Source: Botryllus schlosseri
Taxonomy: Eukaryota
DNA length: 64,000 bases
Direction: 5' to 3'
Assembly (NCBI GenBank): GCA_051294905.1
Contig: CM119374.1
Coordinates: 20,894,001 to 20,958,000 of the forward strand
Shown here: piece by piece, positions 3,101-64,000 of the stretch
Layout: each line of letters starts with the position of its first letter
How positions within the stretch are numbered: the first letter of the stretch is position 1
Made by a program: the position numbers and the translations under genes
Notes under the pieces: generated by a model
Databases searched by the model: none
The model's input: only the letters and a program-made list of their open reading frames with translations
What the model was told of the DNA's origin: nothing

Positions 3101-6100
3101 ATTGAATCCAGACGTAGTCACGTTGTATATTGACACGCCGCTGACCGTGGCTGGACCTGTGAAAATAAAACAACTTCATAAGTTTCAAATTCAATTTCAC
3201 AGTGTCCAACTCGTCATGTGTCTCATATACGTATTTACGGCAAGCAGATGAAAGAAAAGGGGATCTAATACCGATCCAAAAATAAAAACCAAAAATCTGG
3301 ACGCAGTTTTGATGATTGACAATAAAGCATTGAATGTTTTGAACAGGAAATTCTGCCATCAATAGCTTTATTTGAGATGATTTCAATTAATATTTCATCC
3401 TAAGTTTGTGATCACTATTGACGAGTCCTAATCACAGCATCACTTTTACCGAAAATATGGATGCAAGTCAAAGGATAAAGATATATCCTACAAATAAGGA
3501 CAATGTAGGTTTACAAGACGTCGTTCAAAATAAGGACAAATCTTATAAAAATCAACCCTTTCTATGGCATTGCAAATTGTGTGTCTTGAGCGGATGAAAA
3601 TAATATAACTGCTGATTTATTAGAACTTGAGCGTATACCGTTGCACAATAATTAAAAACAAATATCTCTTTTGCTGCCTGAGTGGATATCGAGAGTTGAT
3701 AAACAGATTCGAGCATTTCTAAAATGTTACCTGTAGTCGCATTTGTCCGAGAATCCGTGCTGTTCCGTCCTCCAACATTTGCCGAAACGATGAAATCGTA
3801 AGAAGTCTCCGGAGTCAGTTTATCGAGTCTTTGCGATATGGTGCCGTTGACTTGGTTAATTGACGACACAGTCATCAGGTCGGCGTAACCGTCACCAGAT
3901 ATTTGAATGTAGTATTCGTTTGCGGTTGGAACAGCGTCGAATTTCACTGTGAGACAGCTCCCGTTCAAGACAGATACCTTCAAATTTTTCGGCCCCTCTG
4001 CCACTGTTAAACAGAAGGTATTGCAGTTAGACTTCTAGAACTGTCCTTTGTTTGATTCGATCTTTGTCATATATCGACAAAAACATAAAAAGGTATGATA
4101 GAAATTTTGAACAACACGAAACTGTAGCAATAAACGGTCTATTTCATCATGAAGAAATGCATGGAAGATGTGTGGGTTCACCGCAACGCAAAAAGACGTA
4201 GATCTGATTTCCATTGCGACATTTGAACAGAGGAGATCAATGCAGCCACTGATTCTGCTGATGTCAAATTGATAGAGCAGAAATTGCTGACTGATGATTG
4301 ATTTTTAGACTGTTTATGGATTTTGATATGTTTGCAGAGAAGAAGCTCACGTAGTTACATAGTTATATGGCGTAAGGGTGTCTGAGACTATCTACCGCCA
4401 GGAAGCAATGATTCAAATATTTGATCGTTCTTTGTGAGACCTACACGAGTGCTGTAATGCTGAAAAATAGATGGTATATCTTTAGATAAGTACCAAACCT
4501 TGATGGTATTCATAAGTTACTTGTTTTGAAATTAGGTAGCAAAGACCCAATTCAATTCAATTCAATTTATTGCTCAAAATTTCACCATTTCAATACACCA
4601 AAAGACTGTGTTACAATGAAAGATAGGATGGTGTCGAAACGACTTCGAGTAGTTTTCGAAATCAGACACCCACCTGGCCTAGGCGATGTAAAAAAGGAGG
4701 CATGCACATTGCACACTGAATGACAAGTTAAAGAAGATAATATAAAAGGACTGGTGAAAAAAAATATGACATGTGTAAGAAGGCGAGATCGATATGTCAG
4801 GTTGTGCTCCGGTAAACTAGAGGGCTAACTAGTATTTATTCAGTGGGAAATGTTTGTATTTCGACTTGAATGTGGACAATGGACAAGCTCGATGACTGTC
4901 GGAGAGCCGGCGAGATGCTGTTCGACAAATCCCGTCCGGCATATTTGATAGAGCAATGATCTTTTTTGTCTACCATATGGTAGTTGGACAATGTGGACGT
5001 GCGTCGTACTTATGCACTTTTGATACCGAGGTTAAGAAGTTATTGAAGTTATCAAGTGCATCAAATTGCGGAAAGTTGAGGTATGTTTGTAATTTTGATC
5101 ATTTTATAATAGTATGTGACTCTGATGGCATAAAAAAGCATTTTTCCATACCTGTAGTGAATGTGACCTCTTCAGACACGTTGGAAAATCGGTATGTTCC
5201 ATTTTCCTTGATGACCGCCCGTACATAAGTAACGATAGCTGTGTTTGATGGCAAATCTTTCACCACAATCATTGTTTGATTGGCGGTCAAACTCAAAGAC
5301 GCGTTCAGATAATCCACTGAAGCAAATACATTTATTATGCAGATGCATCCAATTATAAATTCCACAAAGTAGTAAAATCATTGAGTACCTTTGACTTCAT
5401 AAGATACGGCATCAGTGTCCGAGTCCCAGTTTAGGGTAAAGCTGGACGTTGTAACGTCTGAGACGGTCAGATTTTCTGGTGGGGCATCAACTTCTTGCGG
5501 CACTATTATAGAATAACATCGACGTGTGTGAACATGAAAACGTCACAACATCATAGCACGTTTTCCAAATACTATATGTATATTGGATATATATATATAT
5601 ATAATTATAAGACGGTATGACAATTGCAAGATGACTTACAATTGCAACGAAGGCTAACCATTCAACGGGGTCATACACAGGAACCAAATTCTCCCAAGCT
5701 GGGCATGATGAGACAATGTAAAATCAGCAAGAAGCAACAATGTGTTTGTGTAGTTGGTTCATGTTAAAACATGTTATTACCGATACCGACCGTTTTTCCA
5801 TCAGATTTGTGTAATGATATTTCAATGATTTAATTCTCATTTTTCAAATAATCAACTAGCAATAATTGTGTTAATGCAAGATCTTTTCCCCTCTCCGAAT
5901 TTAAATTTGGCATACAGATACCATAAAAGATTGCTAATTATAGCATCATACTTGAAAATTGCAGCGAGGAATAACTTCATACTTTTAATTCACTCACTAA
6001 AATATTTTCAATTGACTCAAATCAGTAGCAACAGCGTAGCGTACAGCAACAGATTTCATTCAGAAATTCACTTACCAACGGTCAGCGTGTAATTCGGATT

Positions 6101-56590: not shown

Positions 56591-57159
56591 GAATAATACA
56601 GGATGAATTCATTGCAAACGCTCAATAGGTCAAAATTCTGTAAAATATTGGGCACTTCTTCGACGGTATTCCCCACACATCGATGAGTGATCCCCATGAA
56701 ACCAATAAAGTTTCCCATGAACACGTCAAAATTTATAAACGTCGAAATAAACTGTTGTTTGCCTTGGAGGAACGGATAATAGGGTTAGTGTAGGGTTGCC
56801 ATACGTCCGGAATTTCCCGGACATGTCCGGAATTTCACTGATAAAACTGCGTCCGGGAGGAAATTCTAAAATATGCCTAAATGTCCGGAATTTTGAAGGC
56901 TTGAAGTAGGCTCAAAGATTTTTCGTAAATCAACATAAACAATATTATTTTCAATCAGCTTTATGCTATTCGAAATTTTTCTTCGCGCTGCGCGCGAGTT
57001 AATGCAAGGTATATTGATATTAGTATGGGCACCAGGCACCGCCCTCGCAAAAAATGCAATCAAAAAGAAATAGAAATAGCCATCATTTACTGATATCAGT
57101 CTAATTGTAATCGCAATTTAAGCTAACGGTATATTTCTAGAGTTGGTTAAGGCGGTTCC

Positions 57160-57578
57160 CTACTATTACCGAGAATGCTATTACCGAGATGGACATTACC
57201 GAGAATGGTATTACCGAGAATGGACATTACCGAGAACGGACAATACCGAGAACGGACATTACCGAGAATGGACAATACCGAGAATGGACATTACCGAGAA
57301 TGACATTACCGAGAATGCTATTACCGAGAATGGACATTACCGAGAATGCTATTACCGAGAATGGACATTACCGAGAACGGACATTACCGAGAATGGATAT
57401 TACCGAGAATGGACAATACCGAGAATGGACATTAGCGAGAATGCTATTACCGAGAATGGACATTACCGAGAATGCTATTACCGAGAACGGACATTACCGA
57501 AAATGGACAATACCGAGAATGGACATTACCGAGAACGGACTTTGTCGAGAATGGACATTACCGAGAATGTATATTACC
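57160..57578 (+). repeat. Left TIR array: ~26 units ATTACCGAGAATG(GAC/CT), 15-16 bp
   Basis: Directly visible; unit count estimated from length. Confidence 0.95.
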
Positions 57579-58382
57579 ACTGACTGACACTGTATGACTG
57601 GTACCGAACACAGTGGACTTGGATACGACCAAAGTAACCATAGACCATAACTACATTACGTACAGATTACGTACCATATTACGTACGTATAAGGCAGTAG
57701 CGACCAACTTTTTTACCCTTCGCTACCATTACTGTAAGAAGCACGGGCGTAACCGATGCCACTGTCAGCAGCAGATTGGGATTCCGGGGTTGAAACGATA
57801 AATATGACAAAATTAAAAATGTTTGGCGCGCTGCAGCATACGAACAGTTGCCGAGCCCTGAGATAGACTATGAGCTTATATTCCACACTCATCACACTGC
57901 ATGTCCTATCCCCAGCTTTGACTGCTCGTATGCAAAGGTGATATAGGATTCGTGCTATATTTTCTCGCCTCTCCTTGCCTACTCGTTACTTCTAGGGCTT
58001 GCAGAAATAAGAGACTGAGGAATTTCGGATGTACACTATCCCCAAAAAATCTAGTCTGCACTTTGGAAAACAATCATTCGTTCAGTAGACCTGAAGTTTA
58101 TTATTTATATGGCATGACTGACATATAAATACAACGAAACAAACGAAGTGAAAGACACTCTAATTGACTTTACACGAGAGATTCAGATTGTAAATATGTA
58201 ATAGTGATTGCCATAGATTTAGTAGCACTTAGGTCTATTGAAACCTAATATCCGAAAACTTGCGGAGCTCTGCTCCGTCCTCAGAAACCTCAGGTACGAG
58301 CAGGGCTCCGTAAGCTGGTAATTTTAGTTTCAATAGACACGGCGTTACGCTAAATCTGTCTTGATCGCCATTATATATTTAC

Positions 58383-60618
58383 TCAGTTAAGATTATGTGC
58401 CACTCTCTTCAGAAAAGTTTCTGGCATTGGGTCATTCGTCCATGTTTCCTCACAGAGTCGCTTCAAATTTTCGCTCAGTGTAACGTATTTCTTCTTTCTT
58501 GTAGGCGGTTCTTGACCAGAGAAAGTTTGAATTAAGTCCACTTGCTTTTGTATGACATCCTTCCTTCAAAAATATGCCATGTTTGTAATTAGTATGCCAT
58601 GTATAATATGCCTGAATCTTAGGGCGGAGATAATAAAGTTAGCTGATCCGGGAGAATGCTAATCATGTGATTAAAACTGATTGCTCTTTTTATTATTTTT
58701 TCGGATATGACGATAAGGGGCGCGCGAAATTTTTCACTATCATCAAGGGGCGTGTCTAAAAAAGATTGAGGACCGCTGATCTACGGCAGCATACAATAAA
58801 AAACTTACTTAATACATTCTAAAAAACTCCAAATATTCACGTGGCACCCCCCAACCAGTACGCCGAAGCCACGATGCCATCCTTCAACGGAGTTGTTCGT
58901 TCGGTGCATGTCATCGATGGTACGTCGCCGCACGTTCCACACGCTGGGTGGGAATAGTGCCCGCCTGACACTGCCTTGTTGATAGTTTGTGCTACCTAAC
59001 GCAGAAAAGATAATGATTGAAATATGCCTATATTGATAGAATTGTGCTACAGCCTACCTATATATGTATCTCGAAAATAATTAGCCAAGTCGTCGGCAAT
59101 ACTTGGCCAGCCGTTGGCAGAGGAAGTCAATCTACGAAAGCAACGTTCTACGTCTGACTCCGGCACAAAAGCCAGGGCCGTCAAGGACTTTACCTGTAAC
59201 AAAACCTCAAGTTATTATCACTTAGCGATAACGTCATTGGCTATCCAAAGGCTTGCCTGAATGGAGAAGTCGCGATCAGATAGATATTGAGTTTTCAATC
59301 CTAACTCCTGCACCTTTCTTTGTACACTTTGACTGAGATGAAACAGGCACCCCGTAATTTTAACATTCGAAAATTCATCAGAGAATGCCCGAATGGCTGC
59401 CAATTCAAAGTCGTGCATAAGGGTTGTGGGCTGCAATGAAGGCCTTTTTTGTTTTAGCACCTGTTATTAAATGCATCATTATTTGTTATTAGCCTTACAT
59501 AGTTGATTATGTAGAGATTGCAGAGTAGAGAAAACTTCTAAATGTAGGCCTACCCCTATATATAATCTACGGGTGGTGTGAACGTGAGGTTCACGTTCTG
59601 TATGCGCCCTAGTGTTTAAATGACCATTGTTGTCAGAAAACACTATGTGAATACCAGAAAAAGCAACAATACCACATGTGCAAATTGTGATTATTCAACT
59701 AATCAATTTTTTAATTCAACGAAATTTAGGTAAAGAATGCATCGATGTGAAATGTAAAATCTAGCAGGCGTACGGGAGTTGCCTTGATTTGATATATTAT
59801 CATGAAAACCGAATCTGCTCGATTACGGTGTTGGCTACATCAATTTCAGCATTCGAACAAGACTTTACTCGGTTTGATAGCTATACGGCTGTACGCAGTC
59901 GAGTGCACCAACATAGGAAAGTTGTTGTGATAAGCATGACTCGCGGCTGGCGTAATTTACGTCATTTCGGCAAAGGCATCGCGTAAGGCAGTGCGCATTG
60001 TAATTCGAGTATAGTTGGTATTTCCTGCGGACGTTTACTCTGCCTCATATGAGACCAAACTCAATGTTATTGGTCTTATAGATCCTATTGATCGTACACA
60101 ACCAACTATATGTATATTTTCCAGCTGCATAGGGCCATCGGAAGTAAATATATTTTCATTCTAGAGCAGAACGAACTGTTGGTTGATCTCAAAGAAAATG
60201 TCATTGCTGGATAGCACTAATTTTTAGTTAAATTTAACAACACTTGTAGCATTTACTTACAGACATTGCGAGCTGCCGTTACTCGTAAAAGCATGATGGT
60301 ATTTGTTAAAGCATAGTAAACACTACAAAACTATAAATAACCATACCTTTGAACCACTTCTTTGGCCTCTACTGTGCCAAAACTAGCACAGTGATTATGT
60401 TCTTGGGATTGCTGTATGATACATGGTGGATCCGACCCATTAATGACTTTCAAGGAACACCGACATCTACTTTTGTCGTAATGAGTGCAAATCCAGTACG
60501 AGATGCCCTTTGACAATTTCGTTTTCCGAAATATGAATTCACCGACGGCAATTAACATATTTCCTCGTGGGGAAAGAATAAATTTTCCCAATATATTAGG
60601 ACCTGATTGCTCCGCCAT
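58383..60618 (-). pseudogene. FLYWCH + MULE (DDE) transposase; exons 60347-60618, [gap], 59257-59460, 59058-59193, 58809-58995, 58383-58563
   Basis: FLYWCH: SPRG..L..GEFIF.K....YWIC..Y.K..C...HNH. MULE: DFELAA, GCLFHLSQ, ALAFVP, YF.DTYIG, FPPSVWN, RTNNSVEGWH, KKKY, FLKRVAHNL*. Splice phases are consistent; the DGTF exon was not found. Confidence 0.88.
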
Positions 60619-61182
60619 TTAGCCACTCACGTCTCTTAGCTGACCAACACCAGGTTAGAAAATTCTGAAGACAGGAAGTCGATTCACTCGATAAGATAGA
60701 TTTCTACAACTGAATTGATACAGCAGCGTTGAAGCCGAAAATCGTTAAAAGACATCTAGAGAATTGGATAAGCAATTTGGATCTGACTTCCATCTGATAT
60801 TTGCATCTGAAAGTTGGTGGTAATTCTTCGACCCATCCTGCTGCCAATCGTCAGCTATTGTAAGCGCTCGCTTCCCGTCGGAATTGGCCGGCATTCTAGC
60901 TCAATGTTGCGTGAATCGGAAAGTATAACACAAGTACATAATTAGCTGATAAATCGCGCACATGCTTTTCTGGGTCAACTCGAAATAATAAACAACAATG
61001 GCCTATTCCCGCTGATTAAAAGGTGTAATTCAATCTCTACCAAAGAAGCTTCTCCATCTCCGAAAGACCACCAAATTTTGTCTGCTCCATAGAAATGTAC
61101 CAGTTCCACTGCGGTCATTGCCTCGAATATTTCAATGACGTCTTTATCTTGGAAGGAGTTTACTACATGTCATTTCTCTTAA

Positions 61183-61297
61183 GATGTAGTAAATAAAACC
61201 TTTGAGATGATCACAAAGCACCCAACTACAAACAGTTTGTTCGAAAATTCGTAGCTGCATTTCAAAATCTTGAGCACAAACATGAGCAAAAATACAC
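61183..61297 (+). pseudogene. Short frameshifted transposase relic resembling Chapaev3-type (CMC) proteins
   Basis: DVVNKTF/DDHKAPNYKQFVRKFVAAFQNL/NMS/KIH compared with the recalled consensus VVxNFLGNHKAxNYxxLVxxLLxAFQxLGCNMSxKIHF; family name from memory. Confidence 0.5.
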
Positions 61298-62090
61298 CCC
61301 CTGTGTGGAACAGTACCACACCGGATATCCGACAGTCGTCGACTATGTCCGCATTCAAGTCGAAATACTAGCAATTTCCACTAAATGAATACTAGTCCAG
61401 TGCTCTTCAACCGGGGTTTTCGTACACCCTAGGGTGTACCAGAATTTGCAAAGGGTGTACCATTCGGATGGGGTGTACACTGAATAGGGGTGTACCAGAC
61501 GGCAATAACTCCGCTTCTACTGGTTGGAATTGAATCAAATTTGAAGAACATCGTTTCTATAGACAACCTAACACTTTCATGGGGTGAACAGAAAAATTTC
61601 AAATTTTTCGTTATTTATCTTTATATCATAAATAGAAACTTTCTTCTTCCGTAGCAATGCGGCTACTGGTTGGAATTGGACCAAATTTGGTGTGTAGGCT
61701 TAAGTTAGGTAACCTAACAATTTTATCAAGTAGCCAATACGATTAGAGAAAAAAGTCATTTTTGAAGACCCCTAATGAACAGGGGTGTACCACGTCGAAA
61801 AAGGTTGAAGAGTACTGCTATAGTCTGCCCTCAAAAGTACTGGGGGACCACGACCTGACCTCTCGATCTCGCCTGCCGTGAATGCCACCCCGCTTGCTTG
61901 CTTTTCTATACTATCTTTTCTTTTACTTTTCATTCATTTCTTTTACTTTTCATCCTAGGCCAAGGTGGGTGTCTAATTTATAAGACTTCGCCAAGTCCTT
62001 TCGACACCTGCCTATCTTTTCATTATATCGCAATTTTTGTGGTGTATTGAACTGATAAAAATTGCTAATAAACCAATGATGATGATGATT
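61297..62090 (+). mobile_element. 5'-truncated CR1/L2-type LINE interrupted by a hAT MITE
   Basis: PPVWNSTTPDIRQSSTMSAFKSKY*QF.LNEY*, then 3'UTR ending AATAAACCAA(TGA)n; colinear with the reverse complement of 4548-4955. Confidence 0.8.
61398..61817. mobile_element. hAT MITE, TIR CAGT(G/A)CTCTTCAACC, GGGTGTAC subterminal repeats
   Basis: TIRs visible; partial TSD TACTAGTC/CTATAGTC with central TA; the LINE sequence resumes after it. Confidence 0.8.
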
Positions 62091-63559
62091 ATACCCGGGC
62101 ACTGTGGGACGCTCTGTGTGCAACGCGGTACATAGCACGTACGAGTCGTGGCATAGAACTCGCGGGCCTTGTTGCACGGCCTAGTCTAGAGACGGACGAT
62201 AACACTGGCCCCAAAAAAATCCATCGCCGTAGCCTCAGTCGAAATCAGAACTGGAAGTAAAGCAGAGTCAATGTTGAGGAAGTGCTACCTTCTTGTTTTA
62301 GTTCCAACAGTAGGCTATATCTAATTCATGTAAAAATATCAATCATCATGGTGGCTCATTAGCTCGCACAAAACTACGGGAATTACTAATTAATAACATC
62401 GATCTCGCCTTCCGCCACCTCATTTTGTCGCTTGCCTTTTATATTCTCTGCTTTACTTTTCATTCAGTGTGCATCAGGGCTCTTCAAAAATGACTTTTTT
62501 TCTCAAATCGTACTGGCTACTTGATATGAAATATATCGTACTGTGCAAACTCCTTTTAATTGCCAATAGCTCACTGATACTAACATTTTGCTGCTGAGAG
62601 ATGTTATGTTGGGGTTATGTTTGCGCAAAATTGGGATTTGAATTTCTTTGTACCCGCAAAATTGTAAACAATAGTTTGGGACAGAAATTACAGACTATAA
62701 ATTCCTAATCCGTCCCAGCAAAGTTATTGAGACCTCGCCACGAAATATATTTTCTTCTGTGATACACAATAACCACTATTCTAGATTTTCGAAAATCACT
62801 TTCTCAATATTGGGGCCATATGTTGCGAATATAAACAAAGATATCGTCGGAAGCTTTTACGCGTTAATAGTATATTCGCGACCACCTATCTTTGAGGAAA
62901 CATATTTTAGGTAGTCGTTCATATCAAATCTCAGGCGCGGATTTTCAAGCCACTGCCACGTATTTCAAGAAATGCAGCTACAGAATTCGTTTTGAAATAT
63001 TAAAAGTCTACCAAATTACGACATATATCATGGTGATATTTCAGGAAAATACAGTTTTTCCGGTTTAGCACTCTACAGTTAATGTGTGCACAAGACTGAT
63101 GACGGTTGCGTGATGACTGAGCTAAATTTGACTTTACCTTGAGTCCATAAGCGCGAAGTTTCAGCCTGCTGGTGCCCGGCGTTTATCTTGATCTCCCAAC
63201 GTCATACCATAAAAACTCCTTGTAAGTGCACTTGGTGACATTTCACATATTAAATCGCTTCATTTTCAACGTGTTCTCGTAACACGTGTAGCAAAACAAA
63301 TATAGGTCATTGCGACACTGTCTGTCTAGCTACATCACTCATTTTTTCAACATACGTAAAACAATGATGGAAATTTCGTAGGTTTCGTAAAAACGAGTGT
63401 AAAAGTCGAAAATTGCGATTTTTCAAACGACTATTCCGAGCCCGATCGGTTCGGTTAGTCTGTACAGCAAAGGGGGAGATCGCTTATCGCGTCGACACCC
63501 TCGGGTGGTATCTGCGACGTGAGGTCGCCGAGCATTAGTGCGCCAAAGTGTATTGTCGG

Positions 63560-63972
63560 TACTGTCCATTCTTGGTAATGGTCATTCTCTGTAATAGCAT
63601 TCTCGGTAATGTCCATTCTCGGTTATGGTCATTCTCGGTAATGGTATTCTCGGTAATAGACATTCTCGGTAATAGCTTTCTCGGAAATAGCCATTCTCGG
63701 TAATAGTCGTTCTCGGTAATAGCATTCTCGGTAATGTCCATTCTCTGTAATGGTCATTCTCGGTAATTGTATTCTCGGTAATAGACATTCTCGGTAATAG
63801 TATTCTCGGTAATAGCCATTCTCGGTAATAGCCATTCTCGGTAATAGTATTCTCGGTATTGTCCATTCTCGGTGATGTCCATTCTCGGTATTGTCCATTC
63901 TCGGTAATGTCCATTCTCGGTATTGTCCTTCTCGGTAATAGCATTCTCGGTAATAGCATTCTCGGTATTGTC
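63560..63972 (-). repeat. Right TIR array: the same unit, inverted
   Basis: CATTCTCGGTAAT units; the distance from the element end to the first TACCGAG (13 nt) is equal on both sides. Confidence 0.95.
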
Positions 63973-64000
63973 CGGATACGGGTTAAGGCCGATTGGATGC

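What the first reader, a model, noticed from the sequence alone, without database searches (positions are those of the whole stretch)
57145..63989. Complete Phantom-like Mutator transposon whose TIRs are ~410-bp minisatellite arrays
Seen: two minisatellites 6 kb apart are in inverted orientation, bracketed by an exact 9-bp duplication (GGTTAAGGC), and enclose a FLYWCH+MULE gene. Established: Mutator elements make 9-bp TSDs, and Phantom elements encode FLYWCH+MULE and can have foldback-like repeat TIRs. The unmutated TSD suggests a fairly recent insertion, yet the element carries older nested insertions and a broken transposase. Inference: it was mobilised in trans with its cargo.
Basis: partly seen in the sequence, partly recalled or inferred. 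Interest (0 to 1): 0.75.

Follow-up and report, generated by a model that had tools for sequence, protein, structure and literature searches.

The report
Recently jumped Foldback-type Mutator transposon
This is a 6.8-kb defective copy of a Foldback-like Mutator (Phantom-type) jumping gene whose ends are arrays of a 16-base repeat. It moved very recently, because an identical copy sits on another chromosome, but the kind of element is already known.

Summary
Two inverted arrays of 414 and 416 bp, built from a 16-bp unit, bracket window 57154-63980. An exact 9-bp duplication, GGTTAAGGC, flanks the element. FLYWCH and MULE coding pieces lie inside on the minus strand.

- A second copy on contig C8 is identical at all 6,827 positions but has a different 9-bp duplication, TGCAAAAGC.
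- Both insertions sit inside other repeats, and paralogues of those repeats carry a single 9-mer (paralogous empty sites).
- Five of six complete copies examined have perfect, different 9-bp duplications.
- The genome holds 283 left and 163 right termini. Exact-match termini pair up into elements of about 0.5 to 17.8 kb.

- Most apparent breaks in the transposase are introns. The gene has eight exons, and three introns are supported by spliced contigs in RNA-like runs.
- The real defect is a 1.9-kb internal deletion that removes exons 2a-3, which include the first catalytic aspartate.
- The outermost 11-13 nt of the two ends are not inverted. They are asymmetric and conserved.
- An 8,649-bp copy on C14 has all exons open and is a candidate autonomous source.

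The architecture matches published Foldback/Phantom elements such as Tm1. It is a new member of a known kind. The scan had already noted a sister family elsewhere in this genome (s1-268414).

The parts
57145..57153 (.). left copy of the 9-bp target-site duplication GGTTAAGGC
   Evidence: Exact 9-mer. Paralogues of the host repeat carry one copy only; the left and right flanks overlap by exactly 9 bp in L049, L050 and L051.
57154..57164 (+). left asymmetric terminus GGTTCCCTACT
   Evidence: Identical in all family copies examined. 34 exact and 283 <=2-mismatch genomic matches to the 20-mer, with 0 in the reversed control.
57165..57578 (+). left arm: array of 26 units of 15-16 bp (consensus ATTACCGAGAATGGAC, core TACCGAGAA)
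57579..58385 (-). left subterminal region, which is the 3' untranslated region of the transposase gene
   Evidence: Shared with 40+ genomic places. A spliced contig from run X13 runs on from exon 7 down to 57511, inside the array.
58386..58562 (-). exon 7 (last coding exon)
   Evidence: Open frame. Conserved in the family and the sister family. Joint 58562/58808 seen in X13 and X7.
58563..58807 (-). intron 7 (245 nt, GT-AG)
   Evidence: Spliced contigs in X13 and X7; boundaries read.
58808..58991 (-). exon 6, carrying the catalytic-glutamate motif RTNNSVEGWH
58992..59053 (-). intron 6 (62 nt, GT-AG)
59054..59192 (-). exon 5
59193..59255 (-). intron 5 (63 nt, GC-AG)
59256..59460 (-). exon 4: second half of the MULE domain (second aspartate in MHDFE, CLFH motif)
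   Evidence: Pfam PF10551 profile positions 59-98; alignment to an intronless FLYWCH-MULE ORF.
59461..60151 (-). remnant of intron 4
   Evidence: Collinear with copies L012-L015 up to 60154.
60152..60154 (.). junction of the 1.9-kb internal deletion (3-nt overlap) that removed exons 2a, 2b and 3
   Evidence: L013 positions 3245-5191 are absent here. Those exons are present in L013, L014, L012 and L019 but not in this copy or its C8 twin. Contigs of four runs diverge at exactly this point.
60155..60346 (-). remnant of intron 1
60347..60618 (-). exon 1: start codon and FLYWCH zinc finger
   Evidence: Pfam PF04500 E 8.6e-10. Donor CAAAG|GTATGG read.
60619..61394 (-). region upstream of the gene (putative promoter and 5' UTR), shared with other copies
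   Evidence: Matches copies on C1, C5, C3 and C14.
61395..61817 (.). nested MITE-like insertion from a very abundant repeat family, with 15-nt inverted ends and a CTA direct repeat on each side
   Evidence: 10,976 first-look candidates and 95-96% identical copies. The C1 copy is collinear across the site. Sequence read.
61818..62520 (.). internal non-coding region of the family, ending in an inverted fragment (62468-62526) of the same MITE family
   Evidence: 88% identical to the C14 and C13 copies and 98% to the C3 copy.
62521..63551 (.). right subterminal region
   Evidence: Shared with the C3, C9, C13, C16 and C14 copies.
63552..63967 (-). right arm: array of 27 units, inverted relative to the left arm
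63968..63980 (+). right asymmetric terminus ...GTCCGGATACG
   Evidence: Conserved in all copies. 31 exact and 163 <=2-mismatch genomic matches, with 0 in the control.
63981..63989 (.). right copy of the 9-bp target-site duplication GGTTAAGGC

Best explanation
Window 57154-63980 is a complete-ended but non-autonomous member of a Foldback-like Mutator (MULE) family of the Phantom type, meaning a FLYWCH zinc finger followed by a MULE DDE transposase.

Shown here:
- The element has about 425-bp arms, each built from 26-27 copies of a 15-16-bp unit. The arms are capped by conserved, non-inverted 11-13-nt termini.
- It inserts with a 9-bp target-site duplication.
- This exact 6,827-bp deletion derivative transposed very recently, because two identical copies lie at different sites.
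- It cannot supply its own transposase. Exons 2a-3, which include the first catalytic aspartate, are deleted, and splicing exon 1 to exon 4 would shift the frame.

Inferred:
- It was cut and pasted by transposase made in trans from a full-length relative. The 8.65-kb C14 copy has all eight exons open, and spliced transcripts of a roughly 98%-identical copy exist.
- The N-terminal FLYWCH domain probably recognises the repeated 16-bp unit, so each arm offers many binding sites.
- The internal deletion, which has a 3-nt overlap at its junction, most likely arose by abortive gap repair after an excision.
For: - Anatomy: arrays, termini and TSD.
- Identical twin on C8 with a different TSD and different flanks.
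- Paralogous empty sites with exactly one 9-mer for both insertions.
- TSDs in other copies: CAAAAATTT (C13), TTTGTAAAT (C3), CGGAAGAAC (C14).
- Genome-wide termini: 283 left and 163 right, against 0 in reversed controls, pairing into elements of 0.5-17.8 kb.
- Domains: FLYWCH E 8.6e-10; MULE split over exons 3 and 4 in the C14 copy (profile positions 2-50 and 59-98).
- DGTF, DFE...CxFH and NNxxEGWH motifs are conserved against an intronless FLYWCH-MULE ORF from the same genome.
- Exon structure is conserved with a sister family about 70% identical at the protein level.
- Spliced contigs in runs X13 and X7 skip 245, 62 and 63 nt, with GT-AG or GC-AG ends on the minus strand. These joints give an uninterrupted 236-codon frame.
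- Deletion of exons 2a-3.
- Published parallels: Tm1 in Meloidogyne has asymmetric 7-bp termini, 14-bp tandem-repeat TIRs, 9-bp TSDs and a FLYWCH+MULE transposase (PMC3169594). Tandem repeats in Foldback and Phantom TIRs are noted in PMC3688188.
Against: - No allelic empty site was seen. The laid contigs did not resolve presence or absence at the C4 junction.
- The C14 candidate source is only 81-90% identical in DNA to this copy. Exon junctions 1-4 of the gene are predicted, not RNA-supported.
- The expressed copy, about 98% identical, was not located in the assembly.
- One complete-looking copy (C9) has unmatched flanking 9-mers.
- Placement inside the Phantom clade was not tested by phylogeny.
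- Binding of FLYWCH to the 16-bp unit is pure inference.
Confidence: 0.9

Rival explanations
1. The two identical copies are old, independent insertions that were later made identical by ectopic gene conversion, so nothing transposed recently.
For: Many related copies exist that could act as conversion partners. One copy (C9) has mismatched flanks, which suggests recombination between elements does occur.
Against: Identity is 6827/6827 and stops exactly at the element ends, and both TSDs are perfect. A conversion tract covering the whole 6.8 kb between chromosomes, including the private deletion junction and the nested MITE, without touching the flanks, is far less likely than transposition. 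Other copies differ from this one by 2-19%.
Confidence: 0.04
2. The second copy is an assembly artefact: one element was placed twice, so there is only one real insertion.
For: Both insertions lie inside high-copy repeats, where assemblies are most error-prone.
Against: Each copy has its own matching 9-bp duplication, and its own left and right flanks are collinear with an uninterrupted paralogue. A misplaced sequence would not create a correct TSD in a different host repeat.
Confidence: 0.03
3. The element is a chance composite: two unrelated minisatellites happen to flank a decayed MULE gene, with no mobile unit.
For: None beyond the fact that minisatellites are common in this genome.
Against: The same termini, arrays and internal sequence recur at dozens of loci with different 9-bp TSDs.
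Confidence: 0.01

Closest known systems
Tm1, the Mutator/Foldback family of root-knot nematodes (Gross & Williamson 2011, PMC3169594)
   Same: Composite arms made mostly of a variable number of short (about 14 bp there, 15-16 bp here) tandem repeats. Short asymmetric, non-inverted motifs at the very ends. 9-bp TSDs without a clear target consensus. A transposase with an N-terminal FLYWCH and a MULE domain. A family spanning coding, deletion-derivative and MITE-like members.
   Different: Unrelated repeat-unit and terminal sequences. The Tm1-A protein is reported as 496 aa, whereas the gene here has eight exons. Tm1 was judged inactive and decaying, whereas this family has identical copies and spliced transcripts. 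No histone-hairpin cargo was seen here.
Phantom subclass of Mutator (Marquez & Pritham 2010, as summarised in PMC6446971 and PMC3169594)
   Same: FLYWCH zinc finger plus MULE transposase; 8-10 bp TSD; TIR length very variable (18-613 bp); animal hosts; minisatellites associated with some members.
   Different: Clade membership was not tested by phylogeny here. The original paper was not available to read, so the comparison rests on secondary descriptions.
Drosophila Foldback (FB) elements
   Same: Long inverted arms composed of short tandem repeats, 9-bp TSD, arm length variable between copies, and many copies consisting of little more than the arms. This comparison is from my own knowledge and from the Tm1 paper's discussion.
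   Different: No sequence relationship was tested. The FB arms have a more complex gradient of repeat periods.
Galileo (P-superfamily Foldback-like element; PMC3688188)
   Same: A working analogy only. Long, internally repetitive TIRs in which the transposase's N-terminal zinc-finger (THAP) domain binds several repeated sites. This is the model I adopt for FLYWCH and the 16-bp unit.
   Different: Different superfamily (P element), different TSD length and different DNA-binding domain.

Membership tests
Mutator/MULE superfamily | 9-bp (8-11 bp) target-site duplication | tested here: met
   Perfect 9-bp TSDs in 5 of 6 complete copies. Paralogous empty sites overlap by exactly 9 bp.
Mutator/MULE superfamily | MULE (PF10551) transposase domain | tested here: met
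   This holds for the family. In the C14 copy, exon 3 hits profile positions 2-50 (21.3 bits) and exon 4 hits positions 59-98 (25.8 bits). Each exon alone is below the 27.6-bit cutoff. This window's copy keeps only the second half.
Mutator/MULE superfamily | DDE triad with a C/DxxH motif after the second D | tested here: met
   In the C14 copy, DGTF, DFE...GCLFH and NNSIEGWH align with the same motifs of an intronless FLYWCH-MULE ORF. This window's copy lacks the first D because exon 3 is deleted.
Phantom subclass | N-terminal FLYWCH zinc finger fused to the MULE transposase | tested here: met
   PF04500 E 8.6e-10 (window) and 5.2e-10 (C14), in exon 1, upstream of and on the same strand as the MULE exons.
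Phantom subclass | Transposase groups with canonical Phantom sequences in a phylogeny | not tested
No reference Phantom sequences could be fetched.
Foldback-like elements (FB/Tm1 type) | Long inverted arms made of short tandem repeats, with length varying between copies and between the two arms | tested here: met
   Arms of 414 and 416 bp here. Arms span roughly 540-610 bp in the C9 copy and about 530 bp in the C14 copy, judged from alignment ranges.
Foldback-like elements (FB/Tm1 type) | Short asymmetric terminal motifs outside the inverted repeat (a Tm1 feature) | tested here: met
   Left GGTTCCCTACT versus right (reverse-complemented) CGTATCCGGAC. Both are conserved across copies.
Foldback-like elements (FB/Tm1 type) | MITE-like members consisting of arms only | tested here: inconclusive
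   Exact left and right termini pair at 0.5-1.5 kb at a dozen loci by coordinates.

The most novel reading that the evidence does not exclude
The family is transposing now in this animal. That would give a naturally active metazoan Foldback/Phantom MULE in which three things are already identified: a candidate autonomous copy (C14), a defined non-autonomous partner (this 6.8-kb element) and expressed, spliced transposase mRNA. With these one could test directly the long-open question of whether the tandem repeats in Foldback/Phantom arms are the binding sites of the FLYWCH domain.
Probability: 0.5. Interest if true: 0.5.

Novelty: new member of a known kind. Interest (0 to 1): 0.35.

Why it matters
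Foldback-like elements are known for causing chromosomal rearrangements, yet their transposition is poorly understood. According to PMC3688188, whether the tandem repeats of Foldback and Phantom arms bind the transposase is untested. From my own knowledge, Muta1 of Aedes is the only animal MULE I know to have been shown active.

This family offers a tractable system. It has a 100%-identical pair that proves recent movement, a full-length candidate source, spliced transcripts, and a graded series of deletion derivatives. For annotation of this genome, it also shows that the family's gene must be modelled with introns rather than called a pseudogene.

Tried and rejected
- Rfam scan of 57000-64000 at E<=0.1: no hit, so no ribozyme or structured RNA is involved.
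- Pfam on other open pieces of the internal region (60978-61380, 61953-62180, 59482-60044): nothing.
- ORF listing of full-length relatives found no long ORF. This first looked like universal decay. It was reinterpreted as exon-intron structure after comparison with the sister family and after the spliced contigs were seen.
This remains unresolved.
- A possible truncated FLYWCH plus half-MULE protein from this copy: rejected. Exon 1 ends in phase 2 and exon 4 begins in phase 0, so direct splicing gives an immediate stop.
- The protein-atlas search was unreachable twice. The original Phantom paper (PMC2927773) is not held.
- The costly protein searches were not used, because the family scans already named the protein.
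- The joined spliced protein was never sent to a search tool. Exons were searched one by one by reference. Joining was done only inside scripts, to test for stops.
Full report
**Observation**

Tandem Repeats Finder reports a 16-bp-unit array at 57165-57578 (consensus ATTACCGAGAATGGAC, 26.4 copies, 84% matches). It reports the reverse-complement unit at 63552/63566-63967. The repeat finder pairs the two arrays as inverted repeats. The outermost 119 nt (57167-57285 against 63849-63967) are 91% complementary. A global alignment of the two arms gives 90% identity, with 26 and 27 units spaced 15 or 16 bp apart around an almost invariant core TACCGAGAA.

GGTTAAGGC occurs only twice in the 64-kb window, at 57145-57153 and 63981-63989, directly outside the arms. 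The mobile unit is 57154-63980, 6,827 bp.

One detail differs from the finding. The extreme ends, GGTTCCCTACT on the left and GTCCGGATACG on the right, are not inverted copies of each other.

**Proof of transposition**

The window is contig C4:20894001-20958000 of a 495-Mb assembly. A search of that assembly with the left subterminal region found more than 40 related places, including a 100% match on contig C8.

Aligning the fetched C8 locus shows that all 6,827 positions of the element are identical. The flanks are unrelated, and the C8 copy is bracketed by its own 9-bp repeat, TGCAAAAGC.

Both insertions happen to lie inside other dispersed repeats. This supplies paralogous empty sites. In five paralogues of the C8 host repeat (98-99% identical), the left flank including the 9-mer and the right flank including the 9-mer align with an overlap of exactly 9 bp. 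The same holds for three paralogues of the C4 host repeat. So a single 9-mer was duplicated on insertion, and the element boundaries are exactly as stated.

Other complete copies carry CAAAAATTT/CAAAAATTT (C13), TTTGTAAAT/TTTGTAAAT (C3) and CGGAAGAAC/CGGAAGAAC (C14). One copy, on C9, has unmatched 9-mers.

Genome-wide, the 20-nt left terminus occurs 283 times and the right terminus 163 times at up to 2 mismatches. Exact matches number 34 and 31. The reversed control patterns give zero. By coordinates, the exact termini pair in the correct orientation at about 25 loci. The spacings run from about 0.5 kb to 17.8 kb. This is the size spectrum expected of a family with full-length, deletion-derivative and arm-only members.

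**The gene**

All coding pieces lie on the minus strand. Pfam identifies FLYWCH in a 95-codon open frame that begins with ATG (60334-60618, E 8.6e-10). It identifies the second half of the MULE domain at 59221-59463.

No copy in the family has a long ORF. However, the short open frames have the same lengths in every copy, and also in a sister family whose exons are about 70% identical at the protein level. Translated comparison with that sister family delimits eight conserved blocks. This pointed to introns rather than decay.

Laying public runs on the region confirmed the introns. Contigs of runs X13 and X7 skip 58563-58807, 58992-59053 and 59193-59255. Both runs are small assemblies of the size expected for RNA, and the tool marks X7 as probably RNA. 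On the minus strand these gaps have GT-AG, GT-AG and GC-AG boundaries. Joining exons 4-7 at these joints gives an uninterrupted 236-codon frame ending in a stop. The deep DNA run X4 shows no such joints.

The spliced contig differs from this copy at roughly 2% of positions. It therefore comes from a close relative, not from this copy. It shows that the family is transcribed and spliced.

**The defect in this copy**

Copies on C9, C13 and C16 (94-95% identical) are collinear with this element from the left arm to 60154 and again from 60152 onward. Between those points they hold about 1.95 kb that is absent here. The missing segment contains exons 2a, 2b and 3.

In the C14 copy, exon 3 matches MULE profile positions 2-50 and exon 4 matches positions 59-98. 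Exon 3 carries the DGTF motif, which aligns with the first catalytic aspartate region of an intronless 491-aa FLYWCH-MULE ORF found elsewhere in the genome. Exon 4 carries DFE...GCLFH and exon 6 carries NNSIEGWH.

This copy and its C8 twin therefore lack the first catalytic aspartate. In addition, exon 1 ends in phase 2 and exon 4 starts in phase 0, so direct splicing would run into a stop. The copy cannot make transposase.

The deletion junction has a 3-nt overlap. I read this, by inference, as the signature of abortive gap repair, the usual origin of internally deleted DNA transposons.

**A possible source of transposase**

The C14 copy (C14:22255631-22264279, 8,649 bp) has exact termini, a perfect TSD and all eight exons open, beginning with methionine. 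For every junction there is at least one splice-site pair that preserves the frame.

It is only 81-90% identical to this element in DNA. The true donor may therefore be a closer copy that I could not fetch, or one absent from the reference.

**Cargo**

Segment 61395-61817 is a member of a very abundant repeat, with 10,976 first-look candidates and copies 95-96% identical. It has 15-nt inverted ends and a CTA on each side. The family copy on C1 is collinear across the site, so this segment is a nested insertion.

It is present, identical, in the C8 twin, and at 98% identity in the C3 copy.

The remaining internal sequence (60619-61394 and 61818-63551) is shared with other family members and is family-intrinsic. 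I found no reverse-transcriptase or other domain hit that would support a LINE fragment, and no Rfam family.

**Mechanism**

*Shown:* precise insertion with a 9-bp TSD; mobility of a transposase-defective derivative together with its nested MITE; conserved asymmetric termini; arms made of a repeated unit; and a transcribed, spliced FLYWCH-MULE gene in the family.

*Inferred:* cut-and-paste mobilisation in trans by the family's DDE transposase. I also infer that the FLYWCH domain recognises the repeated 16-bp unit, so that each arm provides some 26 binding sites. [quoted passage not shown] That paper states that the corresponding question for Foldback and Phantom repeats is untested.

**Comparison with known systems**

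The closest published description is Tm1 of root-knot nematodes. It has asymmetric 7-bp terminal motifs outside the inverted repeat, arms made of a variable number of about 14-bp tandem repeats, 9-bp TSDs, and a FLYWCH+MULE transposase assigned to Phantom. It also has MITE-like and cargo-bearing derivatives (PMC3169594).

The survey of MULE diversity lists Phantom with 8-10-bp TSDs, TIRs of 18-613 bp, FLYWCH fingers and associated minisatellites (PMC6446971).

All defining features that I could test are met (see the membership table). Phylogenetic placement in the Phantom clade was not tested.

What is specific to this case is the multi-intron gene, including one GC-AG intron, and the direct evidence of very recent mobility. 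The scan had already flagged a sister family in another piece of this genome as a Mutator/Foldback hybrid with an intron-bearing FLYWCH-MULE gene (s1-268414). My exon comparison with the sister loci agrees with that note.

**Verdict**

I score it as a new member of a known kind: a well-documented, recently active Foldback/Phantom MULE family. It is of moderate interest to transposon specialists and ordinary otherwise.

**Limits**

- The organism is coded in the tools and I did not try to name it.
- Allelic empty sites were not demonstrated.
- The joined spliced protein was not submitted to any search. Exons were searched separately by reference.

Noticed in passing
window 56780-57153 and beyond 63990 (L044): The C4 insertion sits inside a dispersed repeat of at least 870 bp, with about 5,000 first-look candidates in the genome and copies 91-92% identical on the left flank and 83-86% on the right. 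The family was not identified.
   Followed up: partly
L011 800-1610 and 8438-8837 (G000:C8:16435799-16436609 and onward): The C8 twin sits inside a very young, abundant repeat. At least 40 copies are 98-99% identical over 811 bp, with 2,271 candidates. This points to another recently amplified element in the genome.
   Followed up: no
window 61395-61817 and 62468-62526: A MITE-like member of a family with more than 10,000 candidate copies. It has 15-nt inverted ends (CAGTGCTCTTCAACC) and is flanked by CTA. At other loci its two parts lie about 1 kb apart, so longer relatives exist. A 59-bp inverted fragment of the same family lies 700 bp downstream.
   Followed up: partly
G000, e.g. C12:1565938-1567821, C39:46678-48643, C1:4035803-4037754 (L037-L043): A sister Foldback/MULE family. 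Its exons are about 70% identical at the protein level and it has similar 16-bp arrays. The variant termini GGTTCCATACT and GTCCGGACACC, seen at a hundred or more places, may belong to it, but I did not link them to it. It is probably the element noted earlier as s1-268414.
   Followed up: partly
G000:C6:18298431-18299906 (L045) and about 10 further loci: Intronless ORFs of about 490-520 aa with FLYWCH plus a full MULE domain (Pfam E 1.3e-15). They are 36-45% identical to this family's exons. This is a second, distinct Phantom-like lineage with apparently intact genes.
   Followed up: partly
L013 (G000:C9:3640604-3648854): A complete-looking 8.25-kb copy whose two flanking 9-mers differ (TGCCCCACC against GATTACCAG). 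This could mark a rearrangement between two elements, as Foldback elements are known to cause, or it could be two juxtaposed partial copies.
   Followed up: no
G000:C7:24798433-24798971 and C11:14017614-14017675: Left termini occur head-to-head about 500 bp apart on C7, and doubled 42 bp apart on C11. Unusual end configurations, not examined.
   Followed up: no
window 59193-59255 (minus strand): The RNA-supported intron between exons 4 and 5 has GC-AG boundaries, conserved in the C14 copy.
   Followed up: yes
window 57655-57686: A short 12-bp tandem repeat (ATTACGTACCAG, 2.8 copies) lies just inside the left arm.
   Followed up: no
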